From the IMG/VR virus record IMGVR_UViG_3300034073_003340, positions 186,001 to 250,000 of that record: 64,000 nucleotides of DNA. One strand, written 5' to 3'. The notes under the pieces were generated by a model. The model saw nothing but the letters and a program-made list of their open reading frames with translations, made no database searches and was not told the DNA's origin. Positions 29,294 to 57,185 of this stretch are shown here, one piece after another. A program made the position numbers and the translations under genes. Position 1 is the first letter of the stretch, and the number at the start of each line of letters is the position of its first letter.

Positions 29294-29617
29294 TTAGCTG
29301 TTGCTAACGCGCACCGCTGCCACACCCTCCAGCGAGGGCGACAGCGCCAGCCAGCCGCGCTTTGCGTCCACCAGGCCGACCTTCTGACCAGCGACCAGGT
29401 TCAGACCGTCGAAACCGCGCAGGCTGAACTTGACCGACGAAACATCCTTGCGCGTCAGCTTGAGCAGCTTTTCGCCCTTGGGGAGAGCCTTGCCGCAGAC
29501 CCGATCGGTGGGCTTGATCATCAGCACGCCGTCTTCCATCTTGACGCGAACCTTGGGAGCGTCCTTGACGAAAACCTGGGTGGCGGCTGCGTTGAAGTTC
29601 AGGGTAAAACGTGCCAT
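29294..29617 (-). CDS. AbrB/MraZ-like paralog 1 (putative DNA-binding)
   Basis: KVRVK...IKPTDR...LPKGEKLL...KRGWLAL, shared with 39719 and 56865. Confidence 0.75.
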   Translation of the reverse strand: MARFTLNFNAAATQVFVKDAPKVRVKMEDGVLMIKPTDRVCGKALPKGEKLLKLTRKDVSSVKFSLRGFDGLNLVAGQKVGLVDAKRGWLALSPSLEGVAAVRVSNS

Positions 29618-29724
29618 GTTTCGATCTCCTCGTTTCCAGCAGCGCCGATCGCTGCGTCCATGTTCTCGTTCTATACTCTGGTGAGGAGAAGTCAACCAGT
29701 TTTTCACCAGTTTTCAAAATCTGG

Positions 29725-30000
29725 TTAAAGGGAGCGAGCTTCCTGGAATGTCATCTCATCCACTAGGATGATATCAGCGTCTGTTTCAATCCAGGCCCGA
29801 TCGCCGCACTGAAGCTGTGATCCGTTATATACCATTTTACTTGGCCCTTGGATCTCAACTTCTCGGGCATAACGGACTTTGCCATTTACCTTTATGGTGT
29901 AGACAGGTCTGTTGCCGCCATCTTTGGCGTTCATCGCAATATGCTGCCGGTTTACATGAATGATCTTAGGCACTTGGAATCGCCTTTGGACGACCGTCAT
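29725..30000 (-). CDS. Conserved-type phage hypothetical protein
   Basis: KIIHVNRQHI..N...PV.T.K...YAREVEIQGPS..VY...L.CG.RAWIET; start uncertain. Confidence 0.75.
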   Translation of the reverse strand: MTVVQRRFQVPKIIHVNRQHIAMNAKDGGNRPVYTIKVNGKVRYAREVEIQGPSKMVYNGSQLQCGDRAWIETDADIILVDEMTFQEARSL

Positions 30001-30373
30001 CGCCAATATGAACGAACACATACATGGCTTCGCAGACTTTGGTCTCAACCCCTGTACAGCCCGCGAGCGCATAGGTACACACCATGACGCTCATGCTAGT
30101 GGTACCCTCACGCTTGATATCAGCGTAAATGACCACTTCGTCACCAACCTTCACAGGTGCGAGGAACTTGAAGCCCTCCACCGCAACCGTTACAGTTCTG
30201 CCACCTGCTCGTCGCTTTGTAACTGCGCCTGCTGCCAAGTCCATTTGACTCATGAGCCAGCCGCCGAAAATATCACCATCTGGGTTGGTGTCGTTGGGCA
30301 TGGCAGTAAGGATGCGGACGGGCTTGCGGCCCTCATTGATTGATGCTGTCATATGACCATGTAGAGGTATCAT
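29966..30373 (-). CDS. yciA: Acyl-CoA thioesterase (hotdog fold, YciA-like)
   Basis: AMPNDTNPDGDIFGGWLMSQMDLAAG...VTVAV..FKFLAPVKVGD...GTTSM. Confidence 0.9.
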   Translation of the reverse strand: MIPLHGHMTASINEGRKPVRILTAMPNDTNPDGDIFGGWLMSQMDLAAGAVTKRRAGGRTVTVAVEGFKFLAPVKVGDEVVIYADIKREGTTSMSVMVCTYALAGCTGVETKVCEAMYVFVHIGDDGRPKAIPSA

Positions 30374-30398
30374 CTTTTCAAAGTCAATAAATAGTCAT

Positions 30399-30707
30399 AT
30401 GACAAAACCAACTGATCCTCGAACCATTCTCCGTGAATCCATCGACCGCATCGACGAGCTTATGGGTTTCAAACACCCCAAGGCTTTTGGTCAAAAAACC
30501 GAACCTAGTGATCAAGAGATTGAAAACAAGGGTCAGCAACGTCTCAAGGCAGTGGCAGATCGTGCCAATACGGAAAAGAAGTCCTATGGATTTCTCAGAT
30601 CTCTTAAGAGTAGAGTGTTTGGCAAAAAGACTCCAGAATACCAGCGCGAGCCACGTTCTCCCGAGGAACGACTAAAGGCTATAGCTGCCCGCGCCAAGCA
30701 GTCTTAA
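30399..30707 (+). CDS. Hypothetical basic protein, probably late
   Basis: One of only two plus-strand genes called in this region; TAAATA at 30388-30393. Confidence 0.7.
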   Translation: MTKPTDPRTILRESIDRIDELMGFKHPKAFGQKTEPSDQEIENKGQQRLKAVADRANTEKKSYGFLRSLKSRVFGKKTPEYQREPRSPEERLKAIAARAKQS

Positions 30708-31528
30708 TCAGAGTCACTGTCATCTTCCTGATCCACGTCTCGCTTTGTCTGAGTCTCTAGAATAATATTCGCAAAAACAACACTAGCTTCTTTTCCGCCA
30801 TGTTGGGGACCAACACCCTCACTTGGGACGATTTTCTTACGAAGTTCCCCTGCGGCAATGCTCAGAACGCTGAGACGACGCTTTGCCGCAAGAACGCTAT
30901 CAAAGTCTTTGCCTTCTTTAATGCGCTCCTGGCACAAAGTGGAATAGCCAGCCATCATTCCATCACTTGATCGAGTCAACCTAGCATCGGCCAAAAGCAA
31001 AGCGAGCTCTATCGAAGCCTCGCGGCTGACTAATGCTTCCTCCTTGATCTTGGCGATGGCGTTGACTAGTTTATTGAGATAGTTCACATCGTCCTGGCCT
31101 TTGAGATCGAGCATCTCATTGATTGAAGAGACCTTGATACTTTTCCCATTCAGGAAAACATAGGGAAACTCTGGTTCTAGTTCACCCAAGCGATCAAAGA
31201 TTTCTCCGTGAATCCAGAAGCGCGAATAGTTGTCGCCCATATTGCGGTTTGGAATTTGCTCTAGCATGTCGAGGCTGAAGTCATCGTTCTGTTCTAACAA
31301 CAGACCAGTCTGCTCATTGAAGATCGTGAGTATCTCAGGATCGTCCTCAACGCTAAGATAGCCATAGTCGTTGTAGGTGCCCTTGAGGAGGGTTGAGTGG
31401 GGCACAAACAGGTCGAATGGCCCGTGGCCATTCTCATAGGTCGGACCCCTGAGGACCATGACGTAGGCGGTTTCACCCTCTCTGATCTCCAGACCAGAGA
31501 ACCCGCACGATTCACTCCAACTGCCCAT
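30704..31528 (-). CDS. Hypothetical protein
   Basis: 274 aa, GAGG SD. Confidence 0.8.
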   Translation of the reverse strand: MGSWSESCGFSGLEIREGETAYVMVLRGPTYENGHGPFDLFVPHSTLLKGTYNDYGYLSVEDDPEILTIFNEQTGLLLEQNDDFSLDMLEQIPNRNMGDNYSRFWIHGEIFDRLGELEPEFPYVFLNGKSIKVSSINEMLDLKGQDDVNYLNKLVNAIAKIKEEALVSREASIELALLLADARLTRSSDGMMAGYSTLCQERIKEGKDFDSVLAAKRRLSVLSIAAGELRKKIVPSEGVGPQHGGKEASVVFANIILETQTKRDVDQEDDSDSD

Positions 31529-31605
31529 TTGATGCCTCTAGCTGATACGACTGATATCGTAAAGCAGCACCTTAGCACCAAGGTCTTGTGAAGCAAATAT
31601 TCTTG

Positions 31606-31758
31606 TTAAAAGTTGTTGGCTTTGAATTCTTTTACCCAGCCACGGTCCCACGCCTTGTAGTCGTCAGAGCCTTTGGGGAACGGATTATCTTCACGCTCCT
31701 TGCTGTTGTGGTAGTCGGTCCGTCCCAACTTGACACGAGGATTTGGAGCCTTACGCAT
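31606..31758 (-). CDS. RMF-like small protein (50 aa, not in ORF track)
   Basis: MRKAPNPRVKLGRTDYHNSKEREDNPFPKGSDDYKAWDRGWVKEFKANNF; GGTGG SD. Confidence 0.65.
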   Translation of the reverse strand: MRKAPNPRVKLGRTDYHNSKEREDNPFPKGSDDYKAWDRGWVKEFKANNF

Positions 31759-31933
31759 TATCCACCATTTACCAATGCCCTACTATAGATATCAAACGCC
31801 TGACCCAATATGATCATCCCTGAACCGGTCAGCATCATGATTACAGGCGCTCGTATTCCTCTTCGCCAAAAATAGTGGGCAAATGGAAACATCGCAAATG
31901 CCCACAGGAGAAATACGAGATTAAGCAGCGTTA

Positions 31934-32329
31934 TCAAGCAGTTGCTCCAGCAGCAAGACGACCCATATTCTTGATATTGTCGCCCAGCTTTGCCATCATC
32001 AGCTGATTTTTGAAGCTTTTCACGAAGTTGGGATAGACCGCTTCAATGGACGGATATTCACCGTCGCTGGTCTGGTTGACAGCGATCTGGCGATATCCCT
32101 TATCCCGAATTTTCTTCGAGGTCAAGGCCTGCAGGTCGTGAGCGCCCCACCGTCCGGGATTGTATTTGAAGGTCAGCTTCTTGCGCGTTTCTGCGCTTTC
32201 GGGCCGCCGACCCCAGAAATTGTAGAGCTTGCCTTCGACCTCGACCCAGCCCCAAATCTTGTCTGAGCCCTTTTTGCCAGCATCCGGGTCATTACACCAC
32301 AGAAATGCCTTGATAGTGAAATCAACCAT
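31934..32329 (-). CDS. WGR-like domain protein
   Basis: SDKIWG...FWGRR...KK..KGY pattern; AGGAGATCGAAT RBS. Confidence 0.6.
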   Translation of the reverse strand: MVDFTIKAFLWCNDPDAGKKGSDKIWGWVEVEGKLYNFWGRRPESAETRKKLTFKYNPGRWGAHDLQALTSKKIRDKGYRQIAVNQTSDGEYPSIEAVYPNFVKSFKNQLMMAKLGDNIKNMGRLAAGATA

Positions 32330-32380
32330 GATTCGATCTCCTCTTTTGATGCCACAATATAGCACAAAAGAGGAAACTGT

Positions 32381-32689
32381 CTAGCCCTTTTTGGAACCAA
32401 GTTGTTCCCGGGCCCTTTGGATAGCAGTGCGGAGGTCGAGGCCTTCCTCTTCCCTGAGCTTGCGAATAAGCGCAACCTCGCGGTTGATTGCCTCACGATC
32501 GATGGGACGAAAGGGGACATATTCCGCGCCGCGTTCTTCGGCCCAAAGCTTGGCCGAACGTTCGGCATCAGCGAGATTGTTGAAGCTGTCCCAAAAGGCT
32601 TCGCGATCCATGGATTCGCCCTGACCCCAAATCATAGTGGGGAGGAAGAGACCATAAGAGGTTTCCTGAACTTGGACAATCTTGCGCAT
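32381..32689 (-). CDS. Hypothetical early protein
   Basis: Follows cassette promoter 32744. Confidence 0.75.
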   Translation of the reverse strand: MRKIVQVQETSYGLFLPTMIWGQGESMDREAFWDSFNNLADAERSAKLWAEERGAEYVPFRPIDREAINREVALIRKLREEEGLDLRTAIQRAREQLGSKKG

Positions 32690-32753
32690 ATCAATCTCCA
32701 CGTCTGCTTCCGATAAACCAGATTTAGCAGAACTGGTGAATATGTCAACCAGA

Positions 32754-33032
32754 TTATCCCCACCGTAGTTTGAAATAGATAGCCTCTTTGGTAAATCGCT
32801 TTGGTATTGTGAGTATTGCTTGACGCGATTCCAAGAGATTTCTCAAAAATTCCTTCAAGTCAGCTAATGACCAAGAAGTCTCGGGAAGGTGTGAACACCA
32901 CTCGACCATGTCAAAGCAGTCAGTTTCCTCGAGATTTTCCCTACTCAGAAGCTCAAGCATTTCCTCTATATCCGGATCAGGGTCGTGCTCTGATAGTTTG
33001 AGTAGCCGACGAAGTTCTTCCAATACTAACAT
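32754..33032 (-). CDS. FKLxW-family small protein (isolated copy)
   Basis: Ends RFTKEAIYFKLRWG. Confidence 0.75.
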   Translation of the reverse strand: MLVLEELRRLLKLSEHDPDPDIEEMLELLSRENLEETDCFDMVEWCSHLPETSWSLADLKEFLRNLLESRQAILTIPKRFTKEAIYFKLRWG

Positions 33033-33035
33033 TGG

Positions 33036-33293
33036 TTATCGGTTCATCAAATAGTTTTGCCAGCTCTTTATCTCTTCTGGAGTCCAAACTCGGGTTCTCA
33101 ATGCCTTGAGTCTGCCAGCTTCAATGGCTTCAAGCAAGGGAACCAGTTCCTTCCATGTGGATTCGTCTCGACCTAACCAACTAGCCGCTGCTCGACATTG
33201 TTGTTCCAAAGAATGTGGTTCGATTCTTTCTATAATCTCATGAGCAGTAACTTGATCTCGTCGAAGATTAGCCTCTTCATTGTTGTCAGTCAT
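33036..33293 (-). CDS. Hypothetical protein
   Basis: 85 aa, ATGA-coupled. Confidence 0.7.
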   Translation of the reverse strand: MTDNNEEANLRRDQVTAHEIIERIEPHSLEQQCRAAASWLGRDESTWKELVPLLEAIEAGRLKALRTRVWTPEEIKSWQNYLMNR

Positions 33294-33814
33294 GCGCTGC
33301 GAGCCTTATGGTATTCCAGAGCCTTTTCAGGAGTGCTAAGGCCCTTGATATCGCCTTCACCCACATAAGCAAGATGCGATCTGCCATCTGGAAACCAAAA
33401 GTCAATACCATAGACCATTGGACTGTTTCCCATCAATCCCGCGCCGCCCGAGACATGCCTGATTGTTCCGTGACCAGTTTCTCCCATGCCAAGATTGAAT
33501 ACAACAAAATCTCCAGGCTCATAGATTGCCGGTTTGGCTTTACTGATTTTCTTAATCAGTTCGAGTAGTATCTCGTCAGAGATATAACCGATCTCAAGTG
33601 AGTAGCGGTCCAGATATTCCCTAGCCACTGCTAGTTGTTCATTTTTCACCAGATTTGTCCTTGAAGACGTCGCCGTAGAGAGGATGTTCCCACCATTCTC
33701 CTGGATGATACCACTGCTCGCGCCGCTTGGATTCATCCAAGAGCCGCTGAATACGAGGGCTACGTTGGATAACACCACAGTTGAAAATGCTGAAAAATCC
33801 CTGCCAGAACGCAT
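33290..33814 (-). CDS. Hypothetical protein
   Basis: 174 aa, operon packing. Confidence 0.7.
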   Translation of the reverse strand: MRSGRDFSAFSTVVLSNVALVFSGSWMNPSGASSGIIQENGGNILSTATSSRTNLVKNEQLAVAREYLDRYSLEIGYISDEILLELIKKISKAKPAIYEPGDFVVFNLGMGETGHGTIRHVSGGAGLMGNSPMVYGIDFWFPDGRSHLAYVGEGDIKGLSTPEKALEYHKARSA

Positions 33815-34087
33815 TCATAGCAAAGACTCAACTTCAATAGCGGCTAGCTTTTGTGAAACCTCTTCGGCTGTGACTTGATTTTCATAGTCAAGTCCCAGTT
33901 GCTTCAAGCCATACTGATGAAGACGAGAAACAGCATCATCTCTGGATGTTAGTTGACCAGTTCTCTCAACAATAAGAATACGCCAACGATTGAAGCCCAT
34001 ATTGGCTTTGGTCTTGTGGTAGCCGGGTGTCTCGCTGCTATGCCAGATATTCACGTTATTCGCTCCAATCGTCAGAGACTTAATCAA
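33815..34087 (-). CDS. Hypothetical protein
   Basis: 90 aa, operon packing. Confidence 0.65.
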   Translation of the reverse strand: MIKSLTIGANNVNIWHSSETPGYHKTKANMGFNRWRILIVERTGQLTSRDDAVSRLHQYGLKQLGLDYENQVTAEEVSQKLAAIEVESLL

Positions 34088-34319
34088 AGAAGCCGCGCTT
34101 GCCTTTTATATACTGATCAAAGGCATCAGTTTTGCCGAAGATCTTTTCCATCTTACTGGGCTCATCTAACTGATTTTTAAGAGCTTCCAGATCGCGCCTG
34201 TCCTGCTCTGCCTGTTCAAGCAGCCTGTGAACTTCTTTCAGCCACGATCGCTTAACCGTTATTTTGGTGTCAGGATCCCCAAAAGTCACCGACTTCAAAG
34301 TCTTCATATCAATTGCCAC
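34080..34319 (-). CDS. Hypothetical protein
   Basis: 79 aa, operon packing. Confidence 0.7.
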   Translation of the reverse strand: MAIDMKTLKSVTFGDPDTKITVKRSWLKEVHRLLEQAEQDRRDLEALKNQLDEPSKMEKIFGKTDAFDQYIKGKRGFFD

Positions 34320-34605
34320 GGAGCGTCTCCAACTCGTCCAACAGCGCAGGGAGGGCGTTAGCTGCCCCTACGAGCAGATTCATATAAGCTACAGCAAGTG
34401 GCAGCTTTGGACAATCGTTTCCACCCTCAGAGGGGCTCTCTATCCCATTATGAACAAGCATCTCTGCGATGCCACCCATATGACTTTCATCAACAATATA
34501 TCGACAATTACATGGGTGATCGGGATCACCCATATGTCCGCCATGCAGGCTAACAGTTCCCCCGACGTCATCAATCAACTTACGGAGGGCTTGAATATCA
34601 GTCAC
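34309..34605 (-). CDS. Hypothetical protein
   Basis: 98 aa; ends AANALPALLDELETLR. Confidence 0.7.
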   Translation of the reverse strand: MTDIQALRKLIDDVGGTVSLHGGHMGDPDHPCNCRYIVDESHMGGIAEMLVHNGIESPSEGGNDCPKLPLAVAYMNLLVGAANALPALLDELETLRGN

Positions 34606-34608
34606 CGC

Positions 34609-34797
34609 TTACCTTTCAATAATAAAGACATCATCGTCAGGTCTTTGAGACTGGATAACATCTTTCCAGTTTTCTGCCTGCCGGAGAGCAACATCTCTCC
34701 CAAATTCAGGGATAATTCTGAACGGGCGACTTTCAATCATCAGTCGTGATCCAGCGCCATTTTTGGGCATTCTCACAACATAGAAGCCAGGCTCCAT
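34609..34797 (-). CDS. Hypothetical protein
   Basis: Start moved to MEPGFY after GAGGA SD. Confidence 0.6.
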   Translation of the reverse strand: MEPGFYVVRMPKNGAGSRLMIESRPFRIIPEFGRDVALRQAENWKDVIQSQRPDDDVFIIER

Positions 34798-34804
34798 TGT
34801 CCTC

Positions 34805-35131
34805 TTAGTTGATCGAACGGTCACCATCAACACTTGCTCCATAGCGACGGGCCCACTTCTCGCATTTGCGGAGTAGGACCTCACATATTTCCTCGTTGGA
34901 AGTCTCTGGGCTGTGAACGAAGATGGCATCGAGGGCACAAGCGATGATGTCGATGCTTTCGCCCACAACTCCATCGGAGCCCTCTGGGGAGCCTTGTTCG
35001 CACTTGCCGACCTCCTCGTAGAGTTCGGCGAGTTCGCTTTCTGTATGGCGAGCCACATCTCTCAGGGTGCGACCGTTGCGGATCGCCCCTGAGAAATGCC
35101 TCACGATATCGATGGGATCATTTTTGTTCAT
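34805..35131 (-). CDS. MazG-like nucleotide pyrophosphohydrolase
   Basis: RTLRDVARHTESELAELYEEV...VVGESIDIIACALD...KCEKW (ExxE...ExxD pattern). Confidence 0.65.
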   Translation of the reverse strand: MNKNDPIDIVRHFSGAIRNGRTLRDVARHTESELAELYEEVGKCEQGSPEGSDGVVGESIDIIACALDAIFVHSPETSNEEICEVLLRKCEKWARRYGASVDGDRSIN

Positions 35132-35196
35132 GCTGTAAAGTAACATGAACAGGAAAAGAGTCAATGTCAAAAGCGACCGCTAAGGTCTTTGACCTT

Positions 35197-35484: not shown

Positions 35485-35554
35485 TTGCTAAACTCCTTGT
35501 TGTTGCCTGTAAATTGGTTTTAGCAATTACAGGTCACGAGTCAACACCAAAGAA

Positions 35555-35737: not shown

Positions 35738-35741
35738 TTCG

Positions 35742-38861: not shown

Positions 38862-39428
38862 TTATTCAGAGGGCAACGTGCGCCCCACGTAGGACAGAGG
38901 CAACAAAAGATGCTCTGTGGGATCCAGTAGCGAATGCGGTCGCTCGTCCGTCCAATCAACCGCCTCTTTGGTGCCATGCTTGTGAAGTTCCAAATGTAGC
39001 ATCGACATTGGGCGCCCTTTGTCTTCAATCAGCACTGGGATAACATGCCCGATTATTTCACCGGCTTTGATTCTATCACCGGGCCAATAGTGATAGTTGG
39101 GTTTGATTTCACCATACACCACAACACCACTTTCACCCTCAAGCAATAGTGCCCAGGTGTCCCGCCACCAGGGACTAGGCGGGGTCGCATGGGCACCCGT
39201 AAAAGGAACAAGTGCCACGACTACACTGAATTCAACGGCCGCCACAGGCGTCCCCTCAGGGCAATACAGGTCAACTCCTTCGTGGTAGTGATGTTTGCGT
39301 TTGAAGCCAAACGACCCTGGGTGATCGGGTCCCACAGGAACGCCAGTGTTACCTGGCTCAAATGATAGAAAATCCTCACTACCCTGGCTAGGGTGGAGGA
39401 CCATTGTTGGAAGAGGATTGTGCCACAT
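38862..39428 (-). CDS. M23-family peptidase
   Basis: GSFG..R....HEGVDLYCPEGTPVAAV...GEIIG.V...MLHLE. Confidence 0.8.
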   Translation of the reverse strand: MWHNPLPTMVLHPSQGSEDFLSFEPGNTGVPVGPDHPGSFGFKRKHHYHEGVDLYCPEGTPVAAVEFSVVVALVPFTGAHATPPSPWWRDTWALLLEGESGVVVYGEIKPNYHYWPGDRIKAGEIIGHVIPVLIEDKGRPMSMLHLELHKHGTKEAVDWTDERPHSLLDPTEHLLLPLSYVGRTLPSE

Positions 39429-39492: not shown

Positions 39493-39717
39493 GGTTAGAG
39501 TGCTGTTTTTCTCTAAATGCTTCCGATCTATCAACAAATCTTACGCTACGGCCAGTTCATGATTAAGAATCCTGTTTGTGTTATCCAACTATCCAATATA
39601 TCAAGCATCTCATTTTAGGATCTGCGCTACGGCCAGTTCATGATTAAAAACCTCTGTTTAACCTTTTTACAAATGCCTACACCCTGGAGACTAGCAGGTT
39701 ACACCAGGGTGTCAACC
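39465..39717 (-). ncRNA. Promoter-to-terminator short transcript with two MNWP minigenes (putative sRNA/minigene unit)
   Basis: TTGACA-N16-TAGTCT promoter; 23-nt direct repeat at 39544 and 39625; no long sense ORF; terminator. Confidence 0.5.
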
Positions 39718-39718: not shown

Positions 39719-40093
39719 TTATTTGGACGAGATGCTGCCACCGCTTTGCTTGCCTTCGGCAGCGGTGCGGTTGGTGTTGTAGAATGCCAGTTCTTCAGCA
39801 GTGGCATTGCGCAAAGCGATCCAGCCATGCTTGCCGGTTTCCGTGAGGAACTGGATGTTGGTGCCGATGCCAGCTGCGTCAGCAACTTCCGACGGGATGG
39901 TAAAGCGCAAAGCGCGGACAGCCTGCTTCTTCAGGCGCAGGTCAGCGAGCAGCTCACCCTTGGGGAGGCCCACTGCCGACTTGCGATCGGTGGGACGAAC
40001 CTGCAGGGTTCCGTCCAGAACCCGGATACGGACCTTGGTCGCGGTGCCCATGAGAGCCGATGCGTTCTTGTTGAGGTTTACGGTCTTGCCCAT
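39719..40093 (-). CDS. AbrB/MraZ-like paralog 2
   Basis: KVRIR...VRPTDR...LPKGELL...RFTIPSEVADAAGI...KHGWIAL. Confidence 0.8.
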   Translation of the reverse strand: MGKTVNLNKNASALMGTATKVRIRVLDGTLQVRPTDRKSAVGLPKGELLADLRLKKQAVRALRFTIPSEVADAAGIGTNIQFLTETGKHGWIALRNATAEELAFYNTNRTAAEGKQSGGSISSK

Positions 40094-40157
40094 TTTCGAT
40101 CTCCTTGTTTGCTTCCGATAAACCAGTTCTAGCAGAACTGGTGAATATGTCAACCAG
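40094..40157 (-). promoter_or_regulatory. Prototype cassette promoter, leader and RBS
   Basis: ctggTTGACAtattcaccagttctgcTAGAACtggtttatcggaagcaaacaAGGAGatcgaaa-ATG; 44 nt identical at 41044-41087. Confidence 0.85.
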
Positions 40158-40167: not shown

Positions 40168-40527
40168 TTATTTCAACTTCAGGGTGAAATTCCGACTGTG
40201 CTGTTTGGTTTTCTTGACATCCAGCTTATCGACCGGAAGTTCATAGTAGTAAGCCACCCAGTGGGCCGACCGGACGACCTCGCGGGTCACTTCCACCTCA
40301 CCCTTGCGCTTGCCGCGCGTGATGGTGCGCTTGGTGACCTTGGCTTTGCGATTGTGCTTTTCCAGGCTGTAGAGGCGCGCCAGTCCGTCCTTGGTGCCGC
40401 TGCCAATGAGAAAGCGACCGTTATTGCGGAAGCTGTTGAAACTGAAGCCGCCCTCGATCTTGTGGATCACGTCCATCTTGCTCTTGCCCGTGATCTTCAC
40501 CGGCTTGATCTTGATCACAATCGCCAT
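40168..40527 (-). CDS. Highly basic hypothetical early protein
   Basis: Lys/Arg-rich, GC-rich codons; cassette promoter 40583. Confidence 0.8.
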   Translation of the reverse strand: MAIVIKIKPVKITGKSKMDVIHKIEGGFSFNSFRNNGRFLIGSGTKDGLARLYSLEKHNRKAKVTKRTITRGKRKGEVEVTREVVRSAHWVAYYYELPVDKLDVKKTKQHSRNFTLKLK

Positions 40528-49936: not shown

Positions 49937-49946
49937 ATGAACCTCC

Positions 49947-51240: not shown

Positions 51241-51308
51241 GGGTTCGATCTCCTGTGTCTGCCTACTCACCTGTTTTAACAGAAACAGGTGAGTAGTCAA
51301 CCAGAAAA

Positions 51309-51647
51309 TCAGTTTACCGTGCTGAAAGCTGCCCGCTGGCTACCGAGTTCATTTTCCATGAAACGGATGATATGACGGGTCGCCGTTTCAAACTGGTGCT
51401 GATTGGCATATGGGCCCATCACAACAGTGATATCAAAGCGATCTTTCTGAACGTCGTTCCGCTCGACCGAACTGCCCTGGACCTTGTCACCAAAGCGTTC
51501 ACGTGTTAGTTCTTCAATCGCTTGCCGAACTTGCTCTTCAGAGCCTTCGGGGATATTCCCCACCATCATCATGATCTGGTCTTCGTGACCTGAAAGAAAG
51601 AACACCGGGGCATTTTTGTCTTTCATTTCCAGATAGCCGCGATTCAT
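51309..51647 (-). CDS. Hypothetical early protein
   Basis: Cassette promoter 51698. Confidence 0.75.
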   Translation of the reverse strand: MNRGYLEMKDKNAPVFFLSGHEDQIMMMVGNIPEGSEEQVRQAIEELTRERFGDKVQGSSVERNDVQKDRFDITVVMGPYANQHQFETATRHIIRFMENELGSQRAAFSTVN

Positions 51648-51714
51648 ATAACCTCCTTTTGTTGTTGTTTTTCGAATCTACAATAATTGGTGAATATGTC
51701 AACCAGTTTATTGA

Positions 51715-52110
51715 TTACACCACTTCGCAACGACCAGAAAGTTCAAGGCCGCGTATCGCGTCTGCCGGAATCAAACCCTGCTCAGCTGCCGCTTCGAGAA
51801 TGATGCGATCCATGATCGGCTCGATCACCCGATGAATGCCATCCCAGTTGGTCGTGAGAAAACGACCGCGGCCCGTTCGAAAAGCGCCAACGCTGATGTT
51901 GAAGATTCTGCGAATCAGAGGACCACGGTTACCACCGCCGTTGTTGAAGATGTCGTAGTAGGCGTTGGATGCCTGGCGGAACTTCTCGAGCTTGCGATTG
52001 CGCCCACGCGGTGATTCAACCGCGCCTTCAAACGGGATCATGAGCTGAAGTTGATCAGAAAGACCCTGGTGAGCGCCGGTGTTACCCCAATAAGTCTTCA
52101 TCTTTTCCAT
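51715..52110 (-). CDS. Conserved-type phage hypothetical protein
   Basis: TYW...G..Q...D.L...IP..G...R...N.YYD.FNNG; promoter 52164. Confidence 0.8.
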   Translation of the reverse strand: MEKMKTYWGNTGAHQGLSDQLQLMIPFEGAVESPRGRNRKLEKFRQASNAYYDIFNNGGGNRGPLIRRIFNISVGAFRTGRGRFLTTNWDGIHRVIEPIMDRIILEAAAEQGLIPADAIRGLELSGRCEVV

Positions 52111-52174
52111 GTTCGATCCCCTTTGTCTGCTTATTCACCAGTTCTAGCAGAACTGGTGAATTCGTCAACCATTT

Positions 52175-52510
52175 TTACCAGAGATGCCGGTCTGAACCGG
52201 CTGATATTGATTTAGCGTTCCATGCCATTCTACGACCTGATTCAGCAATATATTGGGTTTCAAACCCCTCTCCGGGAGAGGTTCCACCGGCCTCTATGTA
52301 ATTAAGGTGAAACGAGCCCAGGCTTTGACAGGCAACCGAGGTATCATATTTGAGAGAATGGTCTCGAACATCAAGTAGACAGGAGGTAGCTGCGGATTCA
52401 AAGGCGCGAGCAGCGTCTTTCAGTTCTATTGAATCTTGAATCGTGATAGCAAAGTAACCACCGGCGATTGAGCATACCAACATTCCTAAAACAATTGTAA
52501 GTTTTCTCAT
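52175..52510 (-). CDS. Membrane-anchored periplasmic protein
   Basis: N-terminal hydrophobic segment; promoter 52568. Confidence 0.7.
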   Translation of the reverse strand: MRKLTIVLGMLVCSIAGGYFAITIQDSIELKDAARAFESAATSCLLDVRDHSLKYDTSVACQSLGSFHLNYIEAGGTSPGEGFETQYIAESGRRMAWNAKSISAGSDRHLW

Positions 52511-52579
52511 TTTTGGTCTCCTGGCGGTATCTGCTTATTCACCAGTTCTAGCAGAAATAGGAGACCTGTCAACCAGCTT

Positions 52580-52801
52580 TTAATCCCGACGACGATCAAT
52601 CACACCGTCAACCATCTTGGTAGCATAATGGACAGGACGCTCGTAGATACCCTGCTCGTCCCTGTAGACGCTGATGAACCTACCCTGGCTAGCCAGAGAC
52701 ACCGTCTCACCATAGCTGATGTTGACGCCCAGGGGCCAATGGGCAACAAGGTCCTCGGCTTCCAAGGCATCGTTAAGTGTAGGAAAGCGGTTGTTCTTCA
52801 T
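52580..52801 (-). CDS. Conserved-type phage hypothetical protein
   Basis: MKNNRFPTLNDALEAE...ISVYRDE.G.YERPVHY. Confidence 0.75.
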   Translation of the reverse strand: MKNNRFPTLNDALEAEDLVAHWPLGVNISYGETVSLASQGRFISVYRDEQGIYERPVHYATKMVDGVIDRRRD

Positions 52802-52802
52802 G

Positions 52803-52973
52803 TCAGTATCCCGTGTTGACGCCAGCGCGAAAGCCCGCCTGATAGGCACGTTCTAGAGCCTCCTTAACGTCCCAGACGCTGAGCTCCTTGAAGTCTAGAC
52901 TGTCGCTGTTGCGTGTCTCGAGAGTCTCCAGATCCAAAACGTCCTGGGCGATTTCATTGAGTTCCTCGTCCAT
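52803..52973 (-). CDS. DUF6900-like small protein (56 aa, not in ORF track)
   Basis: LETLETRNSDSLDF..LSVW.VKEALERAYQAG. Confidence 0.75.
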   Translation of the reverse strand: MDEELNEIAQDVLDLETLETRNSDSLDFKELSVWDVKEALERAYQAGFRAGVNTGY

Positions 52974-53203
52974 TAGTAGGGCACCTTGTCACAATTTGCG
53001 AGGGGAGCGCAAAAGGGTTCTCCGTCGTCGCCGAGACCATAAACGATTCCGTCCACTACGGCTTCGACCACCACCGTCTCGACCAGACCTCGAGCATATT
53101 CCATGAGGATCATGTCGCCCTCGTTGATGTCGGAAGGGTTGACTGCCGGGGCAACAGATCCAAAACCCAGCTTTGCCAAAATACGCTCCACAAAGTTCTT
53201 CAT
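52973..53203 (-). CDS. Hypothetical early protein
   Basis: Cassette promoter 53256. Confidence 0.7.
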   Translation of the reverse strand: MKNFVERILAKLGFGSVAPAVNPSDINEGDMILMEYARGLVETVVVEAVVDGIVYGLGDDGEPFCAPLANCDKVPY

Positions 53204-53266
53204 CTGCTATCTCCTCGTCTGCCTATAAACTGGTGATAGCACCATAGACCAAAGAGTCAACCAGTT

Positions 53267-54382
53267 TTACACCAGTTCGAAAACTTCTCCGGTTTCCAGG
53301 TCTTCACACATGATGATGAACTTGTCGACGATTTCCTCGGCAACCTTGGTCACGGCAGCTTCAACAATTGCGTCCACCTCGTCATCGCTTACAAAAGCGC
53401 CATGGACCCTGCGAACCGTTGAACCATTGCTGACCAGCATATCACCCCAGCCCAGCAGGTTCTGCGCACCGCCCTGACCCAGTGCCGTGCGGCTGTCGAT
53501 CTCGCTGCTGACGCGGAAGCAAATACGCGCAGGGAAGTTGGACTTGATAACACCGGTTACAACGTCCACAGAGGGCCGCTGAGTAGCCATAACAACATGG
53601 ATGCCCGCTGCCCGAGCCTTTTGCGCAAGGCGCTGTACGAGCCCTTCCAGTGTTTTTCCACCAGTCTGCATGAGATCAGCAAACTCGTCAATGAAGACCA
53701 CAATATAGGGCAATTCGTTTCCGGCTTCCTTGTAGGCCTTGATATTGCGAACGCGGGCGTCAGCGAGCAGTCGGTAACGCCGCTCCATTTCCTCAACCAT
53801 ATCCTCGAGGGCACGGATGGATTCACGCGGGTCGGTGATAACCGGCTGGACCAAATGAGGAATGCCATTGTAGATGGACAGTTCCAACATCTTTGGGTCG
53901 ATCATGAGGAACTTACATTCATCAGCTGACAAAGCTGCCATGAGGCTGATGATCATCGCGTTGATACCAACGCTTTTGCCTGAGCCAGTTGTGCCACTGA
54001 CCAATACGTGGGGCATGGTTGCGAGGTCGGTGACGACCACTTCACCCATAACGTCCAGCCCGAGAGCAATGGGCAAAGCCGCAGTGGTGGTCTTGAACTC
54101 CTCGCTGGTCAGAACCTCGTTGAGGAGTATGGTCTTGCGCTGCTCATTGGGAATTTCAACAGCCAGTGTGGGGCTACCAGGCATCACGTTGATCTGGATG
54201 CTCGCAACACCAAGCAGGCGCGCCACGTCCTCGTTGAGCTTCATGATCTGCGAAGCACGAGTTCCAGCGGGAATTTCGATTTCGTAAACGCTGACCAGAG
54301 GTCCTTGCTTGGAACCAATAACACGAACACGATGTCCGAATTCGTCCAGGGCGCGTTCCAGTGCGGTAGCAAAGTTACTCAA
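53267..54382 (-). CDS. ftsK: FtsK/SpoIIIE motor domain only (no TM, no gamma)
   Basis: PHVLVSGTTGSGKS, MIDPKMLELSIY, IDEFADLM, AQKARAAGIH..ATQRPSVDV.TG.IK.N, GAQNLLG.GDML; TTG start. Confidence 0.9.
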   Translation of the reverse strand: MSNFATALERALDEFGHRVRVIGSKQGPLVSVYEIEIPAGTRASQIMKLNEDVARLLGVASIQINVMPGSPTLAVEIPNEQRKTILLNEVLTSEEFKTTTAALPIALGLDVMGEVVVTDLATMPHVLVSGTTGSGKSVGINAMIISLMAALSADECKFLMIDPKMLELSIYNGIPHLVQPVITDPRESIRALEDMVEEMERRYRLLADARVRNIKAYKEAGNELPYIVVFIDEFADLMQTGGKTLEGLVQRLAQKARAAGIHVVMATQRPSVDVVTGVIKSNFPARICFRVSSEIDSRTALGQGGAQNLLGWGDMLVSNGSTVRRVHGAFVSDDEVDAIVEAAVTKVAEEIVDKFIIMCEDLETGEVFELV

Positions 54383-54440
54383 AACCGATCTCCTCTTGAT
54401 GTCTCATCATAGCAGGACAGGTGTGACTGTCAACCAGTTT

Positions 54441-54731
54441 TTAATCGTCCCAATGAGCAACGCCCAAGATCAGACCGCGATAACAGGCAAAACCCTTGAC
54501 TGGCTTGCCACGCAAGATTGCGGTGTATTTGTAAATTTCAGATTTGCGACACTGGAGAGGGGCTTGATTGATGAAAGCCTTGCCGATTGAGATGCTGCGG
54601 TAGCCCTTGTCCTTGAGCGTGTCCTCGACCTTTGATTTTCCATATATGTAATCAACTACGCCGGCCTGTGCCGGGGTTGAAAGAATGCTCATAGCCAGGG
54701 TAAAAGCCAACACCATCTTCCGCATTTTCAA
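54441..54731 (-). CDS. Secreted small protein (Sec signal peptide)
   Basis: MRKMVLAFTLAMSILSTPAQA-; promoter 54772. Confidence 0.7.
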   Translation of the reverse strand: MKMRKMVLAFTLAMSILSTPAQAGVVDYIYGKSKVEDTLKDKGYRSISIGKAFINQAPLQCRKSEIYKYTAILRGKPVKGFACYRGLILGVAHWDD

Positions 54732-54801
54732 CTCCTCTTGTTATCACCACAATAACAATTCTGGTGAACCCGTCAACCAGAATTGTTATAAGGAAGCTTC
54801 C

Positions 54802-55101
54802 TTAGTTCTTAACAAGAATTCGAGCGGCAGCTTTGGAAGTAGCGGAGAGGAAGGTGTAGTCCTCGTGGTTTGCGAGATACTTGAGAGCACCCTCATACGC
54901 CTCTTTGAGCGTTGGGCGCGAGCGACGATCGGTGTCCTCACGGAAATAGCGGCTCATCGCCAACATCATCAACTCTGCGCTTTGGGCTTGCGGATGGTTA
55001 GTGCGAGCAGGCTTATAGCGTCCGCCCTCGGGCGCTATGATATCTTCGGTCACGATCCAGCCGGTCTTCATTCGCGTGTTGTGGGAATAAATGAGCAGCA
55101 T
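54802..55101 (-). CDS. Hypothetical early protein
   Basis: Cassette promoter 55156. Confidence 0.7.
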   Translation of the reverse strand: MLLIYSHNTRMKTGWIVTEDIIAPEGGRYKPARTNHPQAQSAELMMLAMSRYFREDTDRRSRPTLKEAYEGALKYLANHEDYTFLSATSKAAARILVKN

Positions 55102-55164
55102 GACTCGATCTCCTTTGTTGCCTACATCACCGGTTGTATAGAAATCTGGTGATGTGTCAACCAG

Positions 55165-55488
55165 TCAATGAGAAATATACTCAGTCTCTGGATCACCTTC
55201 AATGCGACGTCGACCTGTCTTGGGATGGCGATGCCAATGCTTTGGTTCGCCCTCGAAGCCCCGCTGTCGCCACTCTTCTAGGGCATGTTCCACTAGCAGC
55301 ATATTGCCAACCATACGGTCGTCATAGCACCAGCGGTCGTCATAACCCCAGAAGTTGTCCATGGAACCAGTGATCATTGTCCAGTGAAACATGAGGCGAT
55401 AGAAGGCGACATATTCGTCGCCTCCCCGAATAAGCTCAACGTGCTTATAATCGCGCTTCAACTGCGCTAGATATTCTTCGCGGGTCAT
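55165..55488 (-). CDS. Hypothetical phage protein
   Basis: GYDDRWCY...GEP..WHRHPKTGRRR. Confidence 0.75.
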   Translation of the reverse strand: MTREEYLAQLKRDYKHVELIRGGDEYVAFYRLMFHWTMITGSMDNFWGYDDRWCYDDRMVGNMLLVEHALEEWRQRGFEGEPKHWHRHPKTGRRRIEGDPETEYISH

Positions 55489-55526
55489 GCTCGCTTGTCT
55501 ATACCCTAAACAAGCGAGCGTCTACC

Positions 55527-56099
55527 TCAACCCTTGTGTTCCTTGATATAACGCTGGGCAGTCGACAGCCCAACGCCAGTGATCTTCGCAATACGCGGAA
55601 TCGAGAATGACCCCTGGCGATAGAGGTCAATTACGTTCTGCCGCTTTTCACGCGAACGAATCTGGGCCGCGCTCAGGGTCTTTTTGGCGGGACTGACTAC
55701 TGCCTTTGACGCCGAGGACACGGTGCTCAGGCTATTGATATCTGCCTGTGTTACTGCTCCAGTATCGAGAAGATGCTTGATGAGTTTGGCGCCAACTGAC
55801 AGGCCGGCTGTTGGTGCGATCTTGACAAGCTTCGCAGCCTTGGTGCTCTTTTTGGTCTTACTGGACTTTCCATTGGGATTGAATGGCAGACCAGCAGGAG
55901 TTTTGCCTTTGGCCCGGGCATCTTCCCAGATCTTTTTGAAGTTGGTCTGACGTCCACGCTTTGGCACATTGTATTTTTCGAGGATATCATACAACAGCTT
56001 TGAATACAGACCAGGAAAATCAGCGTAGATCTGTTTCAGGGTATCGCCCCTCTTGTATGCTTCTACGATATTCAGTTCGTCTTGCTCGGACAGGGTCAT
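55527..56099 (-). CDS. Multi-HTH protein with Lys/Ala-rich linker
   Basis: N- and C-terminal HTH (SIPRIAKITGVGLSTAQRYI). Confidence 0.75.
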   Translation of the reverse strand: MTLSEQDELNIVEAYKRGDTLKQIYADFPGLYSKLLYDILEKYNVPKRGRQTNFKKIWEDARAKGKTPAGLPFNPNGKSSKTKKSTKAAKLVKIAPTAGLSVGAKLIKHLLDTGAVTQADINSLSTVSSASKAVVSPAKKTLSAAQIRSREKRQNVIDLYRQGSFSIPRIAKITGVGLSTAQRYIKEHKG

Positions 56100-56160
56100 A
56101 AGATGCTCCGTTAGGCGCCAGCAGCGCAACAAAGTGGGATTAAAAATCCCAATGCGCCTT

Positions 56161-56649
56161 TTACGACCCAGGATACTCGGCTGTCAACAGATTTATGGAA
56201 CCAACGGCCTTGATGAGCTTCTCAAGGATCTCATCCGTTTTGGGATGGGGCTTGCCCTGTTTGTCATTATAAATTTTGTTGTCGCCTATTGGGTGAAGCT
56301 TTCGAAAAGCGTTGCTCAGCCGTTGGCCCTGCTCGTCGTCTTCAATAAAAGCGAGAACCTTTACAGGTCCCCAGCGGTTTTCCTTGAGATAACGAATATC
56401 ATCCCTGAACTCATAACCCTCAGGGGCCGGTTCAAATGCGCTCGCACAATATCGATCACGCGAGTAGATAGTATCGTCGAATACCGCCTTTTGGCGACGG
56501 GTGGGCGCTCGGGCCTCGCGGGTAATCTTGCCCCACCAGTTCCTTGTCTCACCACGTTCTGCAATATCGAGGATCCAGACGTTGATGCCTTCGTTAACGG
56601 GCTCGCAATATGCGACACCTCTGAAATCCTTGAATACTGCCCAGCGCAC
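56161..56649 (-). CDS. Hypothetical protein
   Basis: 162 aa. Confidence 0.7.
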   Translation of the reverse strand: MRWAVFKDFRGVAYCEPVNEGINVWILDIAERGETRNWWGKITREARAPTRRQKAVFDDTIYSRDRYCASAFEPAPEGYEFRDDIRYLKENRWGPVKVLAFIEDDEQGQRLSNAFRKLHPIGDNKIYNDKQGKPHPKTDEILEKLIKAVGSINLLTAEYPGS

Positions 56650-56650
56650 T

Positions 56651-56812
56651 TTAGTTCTCGATCCGGTGGTTGACCACGTTGTTGAACAGGGCCTTCTTTG
56701 CCGAGATTACACCCGCGCGCTTGATGGAATCCATTGCCGTCTCCGAGTCGATCTCGAACTCGTGATCCTTACGGTGACGGCCGTTCTTGGTAGTGATGAT
56801 CAGCTTTGCCAC
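56651..56812 (-). CDS. Small hypothetical protein
   Basis: GTG start after GGGAG; 53 aa. Confidence 0.55.
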   Translation of the reverse strand: MAKLIITTKNGRHRKDHEFEIDSETAMDSIKRAGVISAKKALFNNVVNHRIEN

Positions 56813-56864
56813 TACTCGTCTCCCATTAGGGGAGGGGAGGAGACTAACCCCTCCCCCGCCACCA

Positions 56865-57185
56865 TTACTTCGAGATCGAAGCTGCCTTTTCTGCGGCGTC
56901 GGCCGCGACGGCCAGGTTGAACCAGCCATACTTGGCGGGGACCAGCTTGACCGCGGTGCCGGCTTCGGGCAGGTGCTCGGCGATTTCGCTGGGCAGACCC
57001 AGGCGACGACCGGCGCCCTTGACACCGAGGTCGCGGAGAAGTTCGGTCTTGGGCATGTTCACGGTCGAGGTGCGGTCGGTGAAGCGGACCTGGACCTGTT
57101 CGTCACGAACGCGAACGCGGGCCTTGGTTGCGGCGCCGATCACATTGGCACTCACGCTGGCAATGAAATTCACAGTCTTATACAC
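56865..57185 (-). CDS. AbrB/MraZ-like paralog 3
   Basis: KARVR...VRFTDR...MPKTELL...RLGLPSEIAEHL...KYGWFNL; promoter 57260; GC hairpin at about 56829-56857. Confidence 0.8.
   Translation of the reverse strand: MYKTVNFIASVSANVIGAATKARVRVRDEQVQVRFTDRTSTVNMPKTELLRDLGVKGAGRRLGLPSEIAEHLPEAGTAVKLVPAKYGWFNLAVAADAAEKAASISK

What the first reader, a model, noticed from the sequence alone, without database searches (positions are those of the whole stretch)
29294..57185. Three AbrB/MraZ-like paralogs, each in its own cassette: candidate readers of the repeat
Seen: ORFs 29294-29617, 39719-40093 and 56865-57185 share TVN...K(V/A)R(V/I)R...V(R/K)PTDR...LPK.ELL..L...(R/K).GW(L/I/F).L. The second half (RFTIPSEVADAAGI; RLGLPSEIAEHL) resembles the AbrB/MazE strand-IP-helix motif, and the first half ends in a similar L.V.P strand. 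Established: MraZ has two AbrB repeats and binds direct repeats. Inference: internally duplicated swapped-hairpin DNA-binding proteins that could bind the CTGGTG/CACCAG boxes (autoregulated early shut-off) or coat DNA.
Basis: inference. Interest (0 to 1): 0.65.

Follow-up and report, generated by a model that had tools for sequence, protein, structure and literature searches.

The report
Megaphage family of MraZ-like barrel proteins
Three small basic genes in this 436-kb phage genome belong to an unannotated five-copy family. It is confidently predicted to adopt the single-chain double AbrB (MraZ-like) DNA-binding barrel, but nothing yet shows that it reads the promoter repeat next to it.

Summary
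Three minus-strand ORFs (window 29294-29617, 39719-40093, 56865-57185) are paralogs with 30-48% identity and within-genome E-values of 2e-14 and 3e-10. Two more copies lie just outside the window.

The family has no Pfam, PHROGs, NCBIfam, PADLOC or PDB sequence match. An exhaustive profile search found only about 95 clusters of 100-130 aa proteins. Every genomic context examined (related megaphage records, Sinorhizobium phage Phosso, two metagenome contigs dense in small unannotated ORFs) looks phage-like.

AlphaFold2 gives a confident model (pLDDT 93.7, pTM 0.85) with two strand-helix-hairpin units in one chain.
- All five MraZ entries score Z 7.0-7.3, while the next hit scores 2.9.
- B3, SpoVT, AbrB, Sso7c4 and MazE fill the following ranks.
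- ESM Atlas hits are SymE, MraZ and MazE/AbrB clusters at TM 0.55-0.62.

So the fold guess is supported, but by prediction only. Membership of MraZ or AbrB by sequence fails.

Four of the five paralogs have pI about 10. The paralogs form orthogroups conserved across related phages. Each sits behind its own promoter, but so do about 50 neighbouring genes.

The idea that they read the CTGGTG/CACCAG boxes is untested and weakened:
- The box arms co-vary like hairpins.
- The boxes occur in both orientations.
- The boxes are missing upstream of family members in other phages.

The parts
29294..29617 (-). Paralog 1 CDS (P0001, 107 aa, pI 10.3), stop codon included
   Evidence: an ortholog in related phage G001 groups with it
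39719..40093 (-). Paralog 2 CDS (P0002, 124 aa, pI 10.4). This is the protein that was modelled.
56865..57185 (-). Paralog 3 CDS (P0003, 106 aa, GTG start, pI 10.0)
   Evidence: orthologs in G001 and G003
29668..29699 (-). Promoter-like element of paralog 1: CTGGTTGAC (extended -35), 16-nt spacer containing CACCAG, then TAGAAC
40126..40157 (-). Promoter-like element of paralog 2. It carries a 9-bp perfect inverted repeat (ACCAGTTCT / AGAACTGGT) around the -10.
57237..57268 (-). Promoter-like element of paralog 3: CTGGTTGAC, spacer, TAAACC
29618..29630 (-). Conserved ribosome-binding leader AGGAGATCGAAAC of paralog 1
40094..40105 (-). Conserved ribosome-binding leader AGGAGATCGAAA of paralog 2
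57186..57198 (-). Conserved ribosome-binding leader AGGAGATCGAAAC of paralog 3
29247..29280 (-). 15-bp stem-loop after paralog 1, overlapping the -35 of the next promoter (-31.7 kcal/mol for the folded 72-nt flank, z -6.6)
39678..39711 (-). Stem-loop after paralog 2, spanning the next gene's promoter. It is not significant against shuffles (z -1.3).
56833..56857 (-). 10-bp G+C-rich stem-loop after paralog 3, with no U tract (z -1.3 against shuffles)

Best explanation
The three ORFs are members of a five-paralog, sequence-orphan family found so far in phage or phage-like contexts: very large phage records, including the cultured 469-kb Sinorhizobium phage Phosso, and metagenome contigs. Each protein is predicted to be a single-chain, pseudo-dimeric swapped-hairpin beta-barrel. 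This is the architecture of MraZ, with two AbrB-like units in one polypeptide. The C-terminal half is a complete AbrB-like unit. The N-terminal half is a strand-helix-hairpin unit, and a conserved C-terminal strand packs back on the barrel. The proteins are strongly basic. They carry a nearly invariant set of basic residues on the first hairpin (K20, R22, R24, R33, R37 in P0002 numbering), plus K88 and an invariant Trp91. Each gene is an independent unit with a strong sigma-70-like promoter and a strong ribosome-binding site, inside a promoter-dense block of small genes that looks like an early, host-takeover region. I infer that they are abundantly made nucleic-acid (most likely DNA) binding proteins, acting as phage transcription regulators or architectural proteins. 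Because the paralogs are old and retained as separate orthogroups, I also infer that each has its own target or partner. Shown: paralogy, distribution, gene organisation, predicted fold. Inferred: DNA binding, early timing, regulatory role. Unknown: the target sequence.
For: Paralogy and copy number. Family of about 95 clusters, all 100-130 aa with no annotation. Fold model: pLDDT 87.4 then 93.7, same topology both times. MraZ matches at Z 7.0-7.3 for five entries against 2.9 for the next hit. The top nine of 48,161 representatives are all AbrB/MraZ/B3-type barrels. Foldseek gives MraZ probability 0.87. ESM Atlas gives SymE, MraZ, MazE and AbrB clusters at TM 0.55-0.62 and rmsd 2.7-3.5 A. pI is about 10 in four of five paralogs and in all close homologs. 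Basic residues are conserved: R22 97%, R37 99%, K/R at positions 20, 24, 33 and 88 in 75-86%. Orthogroups are conserved across four phage genomes. Each gene has its own promoter and RBS. MraZ binds repeated GTG(T/G) boxes through a cradle of Lys/Arg residues (PMC12957436). AbrB-domain transcription factors are already noted in jumbo phages (PMC7824862).
Against: The fold is predicted, not solved, and Z of about 7 is within the range the tool calls middling. No sequence-level link exists to MraZ or AbrB. The DXXXR motif of MraZ/AbrB is absent, and the best-conserved basic residues sit on the hairpin rather than on the strands that form the MraZ cradle. The DNA-binding surface, if there is one, may therefore differ. 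One paralog (P0022) is acidic, with pI 5.4. There are no expression data, so 'early' is inferred from promoter type alone. The -10 hexamers end in C, which is atypical for sigma-70.
Confidence: 0.55

Rival explanations
1. The paralogs bind the CTGGTG/CACCAG boxes of the roughly 50 cassette promoters, their own included, and shut off early transcription as MraZ-like readers of repeated boxes.
For: The MraZ-like fold matters because MraZ reads short G/T-rich boxes. Boxes and paralogs co-occur in the four related megaphages: 41, 26 and 31 CTGGTTGAC sites on one strand, with 5, 1 and 4 paralogs. In five promoters a second CTGGT lies 11 bp upstream of the -35 box, one helical turn away. The paralogs sit behind such promoters themselves.
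Against: The co-occurrence is within one clade and is not independent. The arms flanking the -10 co-vary to keep complementarity. The mean perfect inverted repeat is 4.9 bp, against 3.69 +/- 0.20 in chimeric controls. Some arm pairs have quite different sequences but stay complementary, which is what a hairpin does, not a fixed operator. CTGGT (10 promoters) and ACCAG (9 promoters) occupy the same position in opposite orientation. Only the CTGG abutting TTGAC is near-universal. Family members in Phosso and in L020 have promoters lacking CACCAG/CTGGTG boxes.
Confidence: 0.12
2. The proteins are non-specific architectural or nucleoid-condensing proteins. They coat or compact host or phage DNA, as described for the AbrB-fold proteins Sso7c4 ('histone-like protein', 5itj) and, from my own knowledge, SymE.
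For: The best ESM Atlas shape match is a SymE_toxin cluster (TM 0.62). Sso7c4 superposes on residues 45-97 at rmsd 2.0 A. The proteins have pI about 10. Strong promoters and RBS suggest abundance. A basic stripe K-x-R-x-R lies on one strand.
Against: Five diverged paralogs kept as separate orthogroups fit distinct specificities better than bulk coating. One paralog is acidic. The SymE nucleoid-condensation report could not be retrieved from the paper library, so that point rests on memory.
Confidence: 0.18
3. The proteins are antitoxin-like decoys. They would be phage copies of MazE/VapB-type AbrB antitoxins that neutralise host toxins from abortive-infection systems.
For: MazE and VapB are among the structural matches. 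There is a faint NCBIfam MazE hit on P0022 (E 0.03). The region looks like a host-takeover block.
Against: No toxin gene is adjacent, and each gene is monocistronic. There are no PADLOC hits. The barrel is single-chain, and the C-terminus is a short conserved strand packed on the barrel rather than a long disordered toxin-binding tail.
Confidence: 0.06
4. The proteins are RNA-binding translational repressors, analogous in logic to T4 RegA. They would recognise the highly conserved leader (...TAGGCAGAC...AGGAGATCGAAA-ATG) shared by the cassette mRNAs.
For: The leader/RBS is conserved in about 50 genes and also upstream of Phosso gp106. The leaders of paralogs 1 and 3 share a 6-bp hairpin kept by different sequences.
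Against: No AbrB/MraZ-type barrel in the match lists is an established RNA-binding translational repressor. There is no direct evidence.
Confidence: 0.05

Closest known systems
MraZ (PF02381; PDB 1n0e/1n0f, 9qlg, 9r4j, 9sz7)
   Same: Both have a single polypeptide with two AbrB-like units forming one swapped-hairpin barrel. MraZ is the best structural match, at Z 7.0-7.3 with 87-96 residues aligned. Both are small and basic.
   Different: No sequence similarity (hhalign probability 0.09%; the Pfam model finds nothing in the genome). There is no DXXXR motif. The flanking helices that build the MraZ octamer interface are lacking, since the model has only three short helices. The gene is not at the head of a dcw cluster. 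There are five paralogs per genome, and the family is phage-borne.
AbrB / SpoVT / MazE / VapB N-domains (PF04014, AbrB clan) and Sso7c4
   Same: Residues about 45-100 superpose on a whole AbrB-type monomer: SpoVT Z 3.7 (rmsd 2.6 A over 48), AbrB-N Z 3.3, Sso7c4 Z 3.1 (rmsd 2.0 A over 47), MazE Z 3.0. The P0002 subgroup keeps an R-x-x-I-P-x-E strand-helix motif.
   Different: Those proteins need a homodimer to make the barrel, whereas here one chain supplies both halves. There is no Pfam match and no toxin partner.
B3 / BfiI-C DNA-binding pseudobarrels (FUS3 6j9b, RAV1 1wid, VRN1, ARF1, BfiI)
   Same: Both are monomeric single-chain barrels of the same metafold. Z is 4.0-2.6 over 79-96 residues at rmsd 3.8-4.5 A.
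   Different: B3/BfiI domains belong to plants and restriction enzymes. There is no sequence relation, and their helices and loops differ.
SymE toxin family (PF08845) and a viral MazE+MraZ double-domain cluster in the ESM Atlas
   Same: These are shape matches, at TM 0.62 and 0.57. The viral cluster shows that tandem AbrB proteins already occur in tailed phages.
   Different: Those clusters are recognisable by Pfam, and this family is not. The matches are model-to-model only.
Uncharacterised proteins of Sinorhizobium phage phiM12 (S5MVW6) and Rhizobium phage RHph_Y68 (BFVD)
   Same: These are the best viral structural matches, at TM 0.63 and 0.58 with probability 1.0. They are also from phages of rhizobia.
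   Different: They are longer (162-170 aa), have no detected sequence similarity, and their function is unknown.

Membership tests
MraZ (PF02381) | Two tandem MraZ/AbrB repeats recognisable by the family profile | tested here: not met
   Pfam gives no hit at E<=10 for the three paralogs and no MraZ hit among 100 family members. PF02381 finds nothing in the whole phage genome, although it matches in 12 of 14 control genomes. hhalign of A3 against an MraZ alignment gives probability 0.09%. That MraZ alignment was of low diversity, so this last test is weak.
MraZ (PF02381) | Single-chain double swapped-hairpin barrel | tested here: met
   This is a predicted model only. Z is 7.0-7.3 to five MraZ entries, and the next family scores 2.9. 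MraZ ranks first of 48,161 representatives. An ESM Atlas MraZ cluster matches at TM 0.55, rmsd 2.7 A over 85 residues.
MraZ (PF02381) | DXXXR motif in each repeat, supplying the DNA-contacting Lys/Arg (K13, R15, R86 in M. genitalium; PMC12957436) | tested here: not met
   There is no D-x-x-x-R before either first strand. Only a basic residue at the Arg-equivalent position of the second unit (R63) is kept, in 56% of members. K/R at position 3 is kept in 36%.
MraZ (PF02381) | First gene of the dcw (mraZ-rsmH-ftsL) cluster | tested here: not met
   The neighbours are small phage ORFs, a thioesterase, an M23 peptidase and a class I aminoacyl-tRNA synthetase. Compare E. coli mraZ-rsmH-ftsL.
MraZ (PF02381) | Ring oligomer (octamer or dodecamer) and cooperative binding to repeated boxes | not tested
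   No oligomer prediction was run, and binding needs an experiment.
AbrB/MazE/SpoVT domain (PF04014, AbrB clan) | Profile match to the SpoVT-AbrB domain | tested here: not met
   Searches found none. The only trace is a sub-threshold NCBIfam MazE hit on P0022 (E 0.03, 14.5 bits against a cut-off of 130).
AbrB/MazE/SpoVT domain (PF04014, AbrB clan) | Strand-strand-helix-hairpin unit that interlocks with a second unit into a swapped-hairpin barrel | tested here: met
   The secondary structure is E48-51, E62-67, H68-73, E80-86, E92-96, preceded by E2-7, H9-15, E20-26, E29-35. SpoVT, AbrB-N, Sso7c4, MazE, VapB, C56 and C68 all align to residues about 41-102. This rests on a predicted model only.
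AbrB-type antitoxin (MazE/VapB/PemI) | Operon with a downstream toxin gene, and a C-terminal toxin-binding tail | tested here: not met
   Each gene has its own promoter and a 3' stem-loop, and the next gene has its own promoter. The neighbours have no toxin domains. There are no PADLOC hits.
B3 / BfiI-C pseudobarrel | Seven-stranded open barrel with two helices, recognisable by sequence profiles | tested here: inconclusive
   Structural Z is 4.0-2.6, which shows the same metafold. There is no Pfam B3 hit.

The most novel reading that the evidence does not exclude
The four to five conserved paralogs, including one acidic member always encoded next to a basic one, assemble MraZ-like arrays on the phased CTGGT boxes at the -35 edge of about 50 cassette promoters. 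This would time the shut-off of a megaphage's early programme. It would be a phage-wide promoter-reading system built from a previously unrecognised single-chain AbrB barrel.
Probability: 0.1. Interest if true: 0.7.

Novelty: new variant of a known kind. Interest (0 to 1): 0.42.

Why it matters
Very large phages carry hundreds of small genes with no annotation. Here one recurrent, multi-copy family can be assigned with good confidence to the AbrB/MraZ swapped-hairpin class, even though every sequence-based library misses it. That gives a concrete, testable role (nucleic-acid binding regulator or architectural protein) to five genes per genome. A cultured relative, Sinorhizobium phage Phosso, encodes two members (annotated CDS 105 and 106, both 'hypothetical protein'), so the prediction can be tested at the bench. 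It also adds a second natural example, beside MraZ, of the AbrB barrel fused into one chain. The halves have diverged beyond recognition, which is of interest for the evolution of cradle-loop barrels.

Tried and rejected
1. Family libraries gave no usable hit: Pfam, PHROGs, NCBIfam and PADLOC.

2. Profile searches of PDB sequences gave only spurious weak hits: a de novo TIM barrel, ribosomal S4e and bactofilin.

3. A weak match to the GW/SH3b repeats of a staphylococcal amidase (4epc) suggested an SH3-like fold around the K-x-G-W motif. I rejected it because no SH3 or GW domain appears in any structure search.

4. Internal duplication at sequence level was not found: hhalign of the N half against the C half gives probability 0.2%.

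5. Sequence homology to MraZ was not found: hhalign probability 0.09%. The MraZ alignment I could build was enterobacterial only, with 92% mean column identity, so this test is weak.

6. The search for related loci with the 100-sequence alignment failed because no stretch was conserved enough. The 22-sequence alignment worked.

7. megablast of the region against GenBank phages found no match.

8. Expression evidence is lacking. No RNA run holds the region.

9. The generic sigma-70 scanner sees only 24 sites against 17 +/- 4 in shuffles. It requires T at the last -10 position, and these promoters end in C, so promoter counts rest on the motif itself.

10. A toxin-antitoxin reading was rejected on gene organisation.

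12. No alternative genetic code was needed.

Full report
WHERE THE WINDOW LIES. The window is bases 186,001-250,000 of a 435,856-bp IMG/VR virus record with direct terminal repeats, rated 100% complete. DNA near-identical to the region occurs in subsurface and soil metagenomes, and partial matches occur in a wastewater metagenome. No RNA run holds it. From about 21 kb to the end, the window is a long run of small minus-strand ORFs. A few genes in it are recognisable: a class I aminoacyl-tRNA synthetase (Glu/Gln type), a hotdog thioesterase, an M23 peptidase and an FtsK-like ATPase.

THE OBSERVATION. The three ORFs are present exactly as described and share the quoted motif. They are true paralogs. 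In a search of the whole genome, P0002 finds P0003 at E 2.1e-14 and P0001 at 3.2e-10. A profile of the three separates five ORFs (E 2e-51 to 4e-12) from everything else (next E 0.22). The two additional copies, P0021 and P0022, lie 27-30 kb beyond the window's end, 2 kb apart. Four paralogs have pI about 10, and P0022 has pI 5.4.

THE CASSETTES. Each paralog is preceded by a promoter-like element:
- an A-rich stretch, then (C)TGGTTGAC;
- a 16-nt spacer, then TG-n-TA(g/a)AAC;
- a conserved ATAGGCAGA-like stretch;
- an AGGAGATCGAAA leader directly before the start codon.

Each paralog is followed by a stem-loop. For paralogs 1 and 2, the next gene's promoter follows at once.

CTGGTTGAC occurs 43 times on the minus strand against 1.7 expected. 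TGGTTGAC sites number 69 on that strand, and most fall between genome positions 215 and 277 kb. So 'own cassette' is correct, but it describes about 50 genes, not these three in particular. The generic sigma-70 scanner largely misses these sites because their -10 ends in C.

FAMILY AND DISTRIBUTION.
- No library names the protein.
- The word-based search found 17 homologs (50-85% identity), several of them on contigs of 372-958 kb.
- The exhaustive profile search of 1.84 billion representatives found 95 clusters at E<=1e-3. Nearly all are 97-140 aa, and none has a meaningful Pfam family.
- Three IMG/VR records related to this phage carry 5, 1 and 4 copies (277 kb; 119 kb, 26% complete; 462 kb with terminal repeats). 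They have 41, 26 and 31 CTGGTTGAC sites on the same strand.
- A more distant 77-kb contig has three copies within 10 kb. Another contig has two adjacent copies.
- The cultured Sinorhizobium phage Phosso (469,473 bp, host S. meliloti) has two adjacent members, annotated as hypothetical proteins (E 1.7e-33 and 5.3e-22). They sit behind TGGTTGAC-type promoters, one of them CTGGTTGAC. The second also has the GGAGATCGAAAA leader.

A maximum-likelihood tree places the paralogs of different phages in shared, well-supported groups. The groups of paralogs 1, 3 and 5 have 98-99% support. Paralog 4 groups with its counterparts only within a broader, well-supported clade shared with paralog 5. The duplications are therefore old, and each copy has been kept.

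FOLD. AlphaFold2 with 22 sequences gave pLDDT 87.4 and pTM 0.80. With 100 sequences it gave 93.7 and 0.85, with the same topology:
- strand 2-7, helix 9-15, hairpin 20-26/29-35;
- strand 48-51, strand 62-67, helix 68-73, hairpin 80-86/92-96;
- helix 99-110 and a terminal strand 118-123.

Several structure searches agree on the fold class:
- Foldseek against the PDB puts MraZ first among meaningful rows (probability 0.87, E 0.05).
- The Foldseek-independent search of 48,161 representatives ranks MraZ first (Z 7.0).
- The second-look alignment gives Z 7.0-7.3 for all five MraZ entries. The best is rmsd 4.3 A over 87 residues, and the next row scores Z 2.9.
- The ESM Atlas returns SymE_toxin, MraZ, a viral MazE+MraZ cluster and an AbrB/MazE/SpoVT cluster, at TM 0.55-0.62 and rmsd 2.7-3.5 A.
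- BFVD returns uncharacterised proteins of rhizobial phages phiM12 and RHph_Y68 (TM 0.63, 0.58).

Individually these scores are moderate. Their unanimity, and the 4-unit gap after MraZ, make a single-chain double AbrB barrel the clear best reading.

The link is structural only:
- The halves show no sequence similarity to each other.
- The family shows none to MraZ.
- The Pfam MraZ and MazE models find nothing in the genome.

CONSERVED RESIDUES. Across 100 members, W91 is invariant. R37 (99%), R22 (97%), P34 (92%), G90 (89%) and T35 (88%) are nearly so. K/R is kept at positions 20, 24, 33 and 88 in 75-86% of members. The K-x-R-x-R pattern on one strand and the RPT-x-R turn would put a basic stripe on the first hairpin; this is inference from the pattern. 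The DXXXR motif of MraZ/AbrB, which supplies the DNA-contacting Lys13, Arg15 and Arg86 in M. genitalium MraZ (PMC12957436), is not present. Only the Arg-equivalent of the second unit (R63) is moderately conserved, at 56%.

DO THEY READ THE REPEAT? Nothing here tests binding. Three points favour the idea:
- the fold class;
- the co-occurrence of family and promoter type in all relatives examined;
- a second CTGGT one helical turn upstream of the -35 box in five promoters.

Three points count against a fixed-sequence reader of CTGGTG/CACCAG:
- The arms flanking the -10 are self-complementary in a promoter-specific way. Twelve of 49 promoters have perfect repeats of 6 bp or more, up to 14 bp. The mean is 4.9 bp, against 3.69 +/- 0.20 when left and right arms of different promoters are combined. 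Arms of different sequence remain complementary.
- CTGGT and ACCAG occupy the same downstream position in opposite orientation, in 10 and 9 promoters respectively.
- The promoters of family members in Phosso and in contig L020 lack these boxes.

The arms therefore behave like a hairpin, in DNA or in read-through RNA, rather than like an operator. Only the CTGG abutting TTGAC is near-universal. It could equally be part of what the polymerase itself recognises.

VERDICT. The fold inference is supported by prediction, and the functional link to the repeat is unproven and somewhat disfavoured. The most likely function is nucleic-acid binding, as a regulator or an architectural protein, by abundantly expressed and probably early proteins. 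The paralogs have probably diverged in target. AbrB-domain regulators are already noted in jumbo phages (PMC7824862). The kind is therefore known. What is new is a sequence-orphan, single-chain, multi-paralog variant, together with a cultured phage in which it can be tested.

Noticed in passing
window 29260-63817 minus strand (genome 215-277 kb and on to about 299 kb): There are about 50 copies of one promoter/leader cassette: an A-rich stretch, (C)TGGTTGAC, a 16-nt spacer, TG-n-TA(g/a)AAC, ATAGGCAGA-like, then AGGAGATCGAAA-ATG. CTGGTTGAC occurs 43 times on the minus strand against 1.7 expected. The same cassette type occurs in three related IMG/VR megaphages and, more sparsely, in cultured Sinorhizobium phage Phosso.
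   Followed up: partly
e.g. window 52171, 51303, 44997, 42580, 41621, 41099, 40156 (minus-strand promoter anchors): Inverted repeats of 9-14 bp flank or include the -10 hexamer. The arms differ between promoters but stay complementary (for example CACCAGTT/AACTGGTG and CACCTGTTT/AAACAGGTG), and they exceed chimeric controls. This looks like a selected hairpin (terminator, processing site or cruciform) overlapping each promoter.
   Followed up: partly
window promoters generally, e.g. 40126-40131: The -10-like hexamers mostly end in C (TAGAAC, TAAAAC, TATCAC) instead of the T that sigma-70 normally requires. The generic scanner therefore misses them. Which polymerase or sigma reads them is open.
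   Followed up: no
window 29618-29665 and 57186-57235, minus strand: The 5' leaders of paralogs 1 and 3 are longer than the usual cassette leader. They share CATGGACG followed by a 6-bp hairpin made of different sequences (GCAGCG/CGCTGC versus GGGGCA/TGCCCC). Paralog 2 has the standard short leader.
   Followed up: partly
genome 277310-277657 and 279469-279759 (outside the window; loci L005, L004): These are two further paralogs 2 kb apart, one acidic (P0022, pI 5.4) and one basic (P0021, pI 10.1). Counterparts of both types lie 1-4 kb apart in G001, G003 and contig L020, and the Phosso pair includes a P0022-like member. A heteromer is conceivable but was not tested.
   Followed up: partly
window 40168-40527, minus strand: A 119-aa lysine/arginine-rich ORF lies immediately upstream of paralog 2. 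It has its own cassette promoter and no Pfam match (PHROGs scan failed on a coordinate error and was not repeated). It may be another nucleic-acid-binding protein.
   Followed up: no
window 27662-28930, 29966-30373, 38862-39428, 53267-54382 (all minus strand): Four genes in the block are recognisable: a class I Glu/Gln-type aminoacyl-tRNA synthetase, a 4HBT hotdog thioesterase, an M23 peptidase and an FtsK/SpoIIIE-type ATPase.
   Followed up: no
window 11813-20892: This is a cluster of large proteins with He_PIG Ig-like domains (734, 422 and 374 aa), plus a 1042-aa protein with a weak pectinesterase-like stretch. They are probably tail-fibre or host-recognition proteins, encoded on both strands.
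   Followed up: no
locus L025 (Sinorhizobium phage Phosso, PV764938.1 47205-47546 and 47908-48279): This cultured 469-kb phage of S. meliloti encodes two adjacent family members, annotated 'hypothetical protein'. It shares the TGGTTGAC promoter type and the GGAGATCGAAAA leader. This hints at a rhizobial or alphaproteobacterial host for the window's phage and offers an experimental system.
   Followed up: partly
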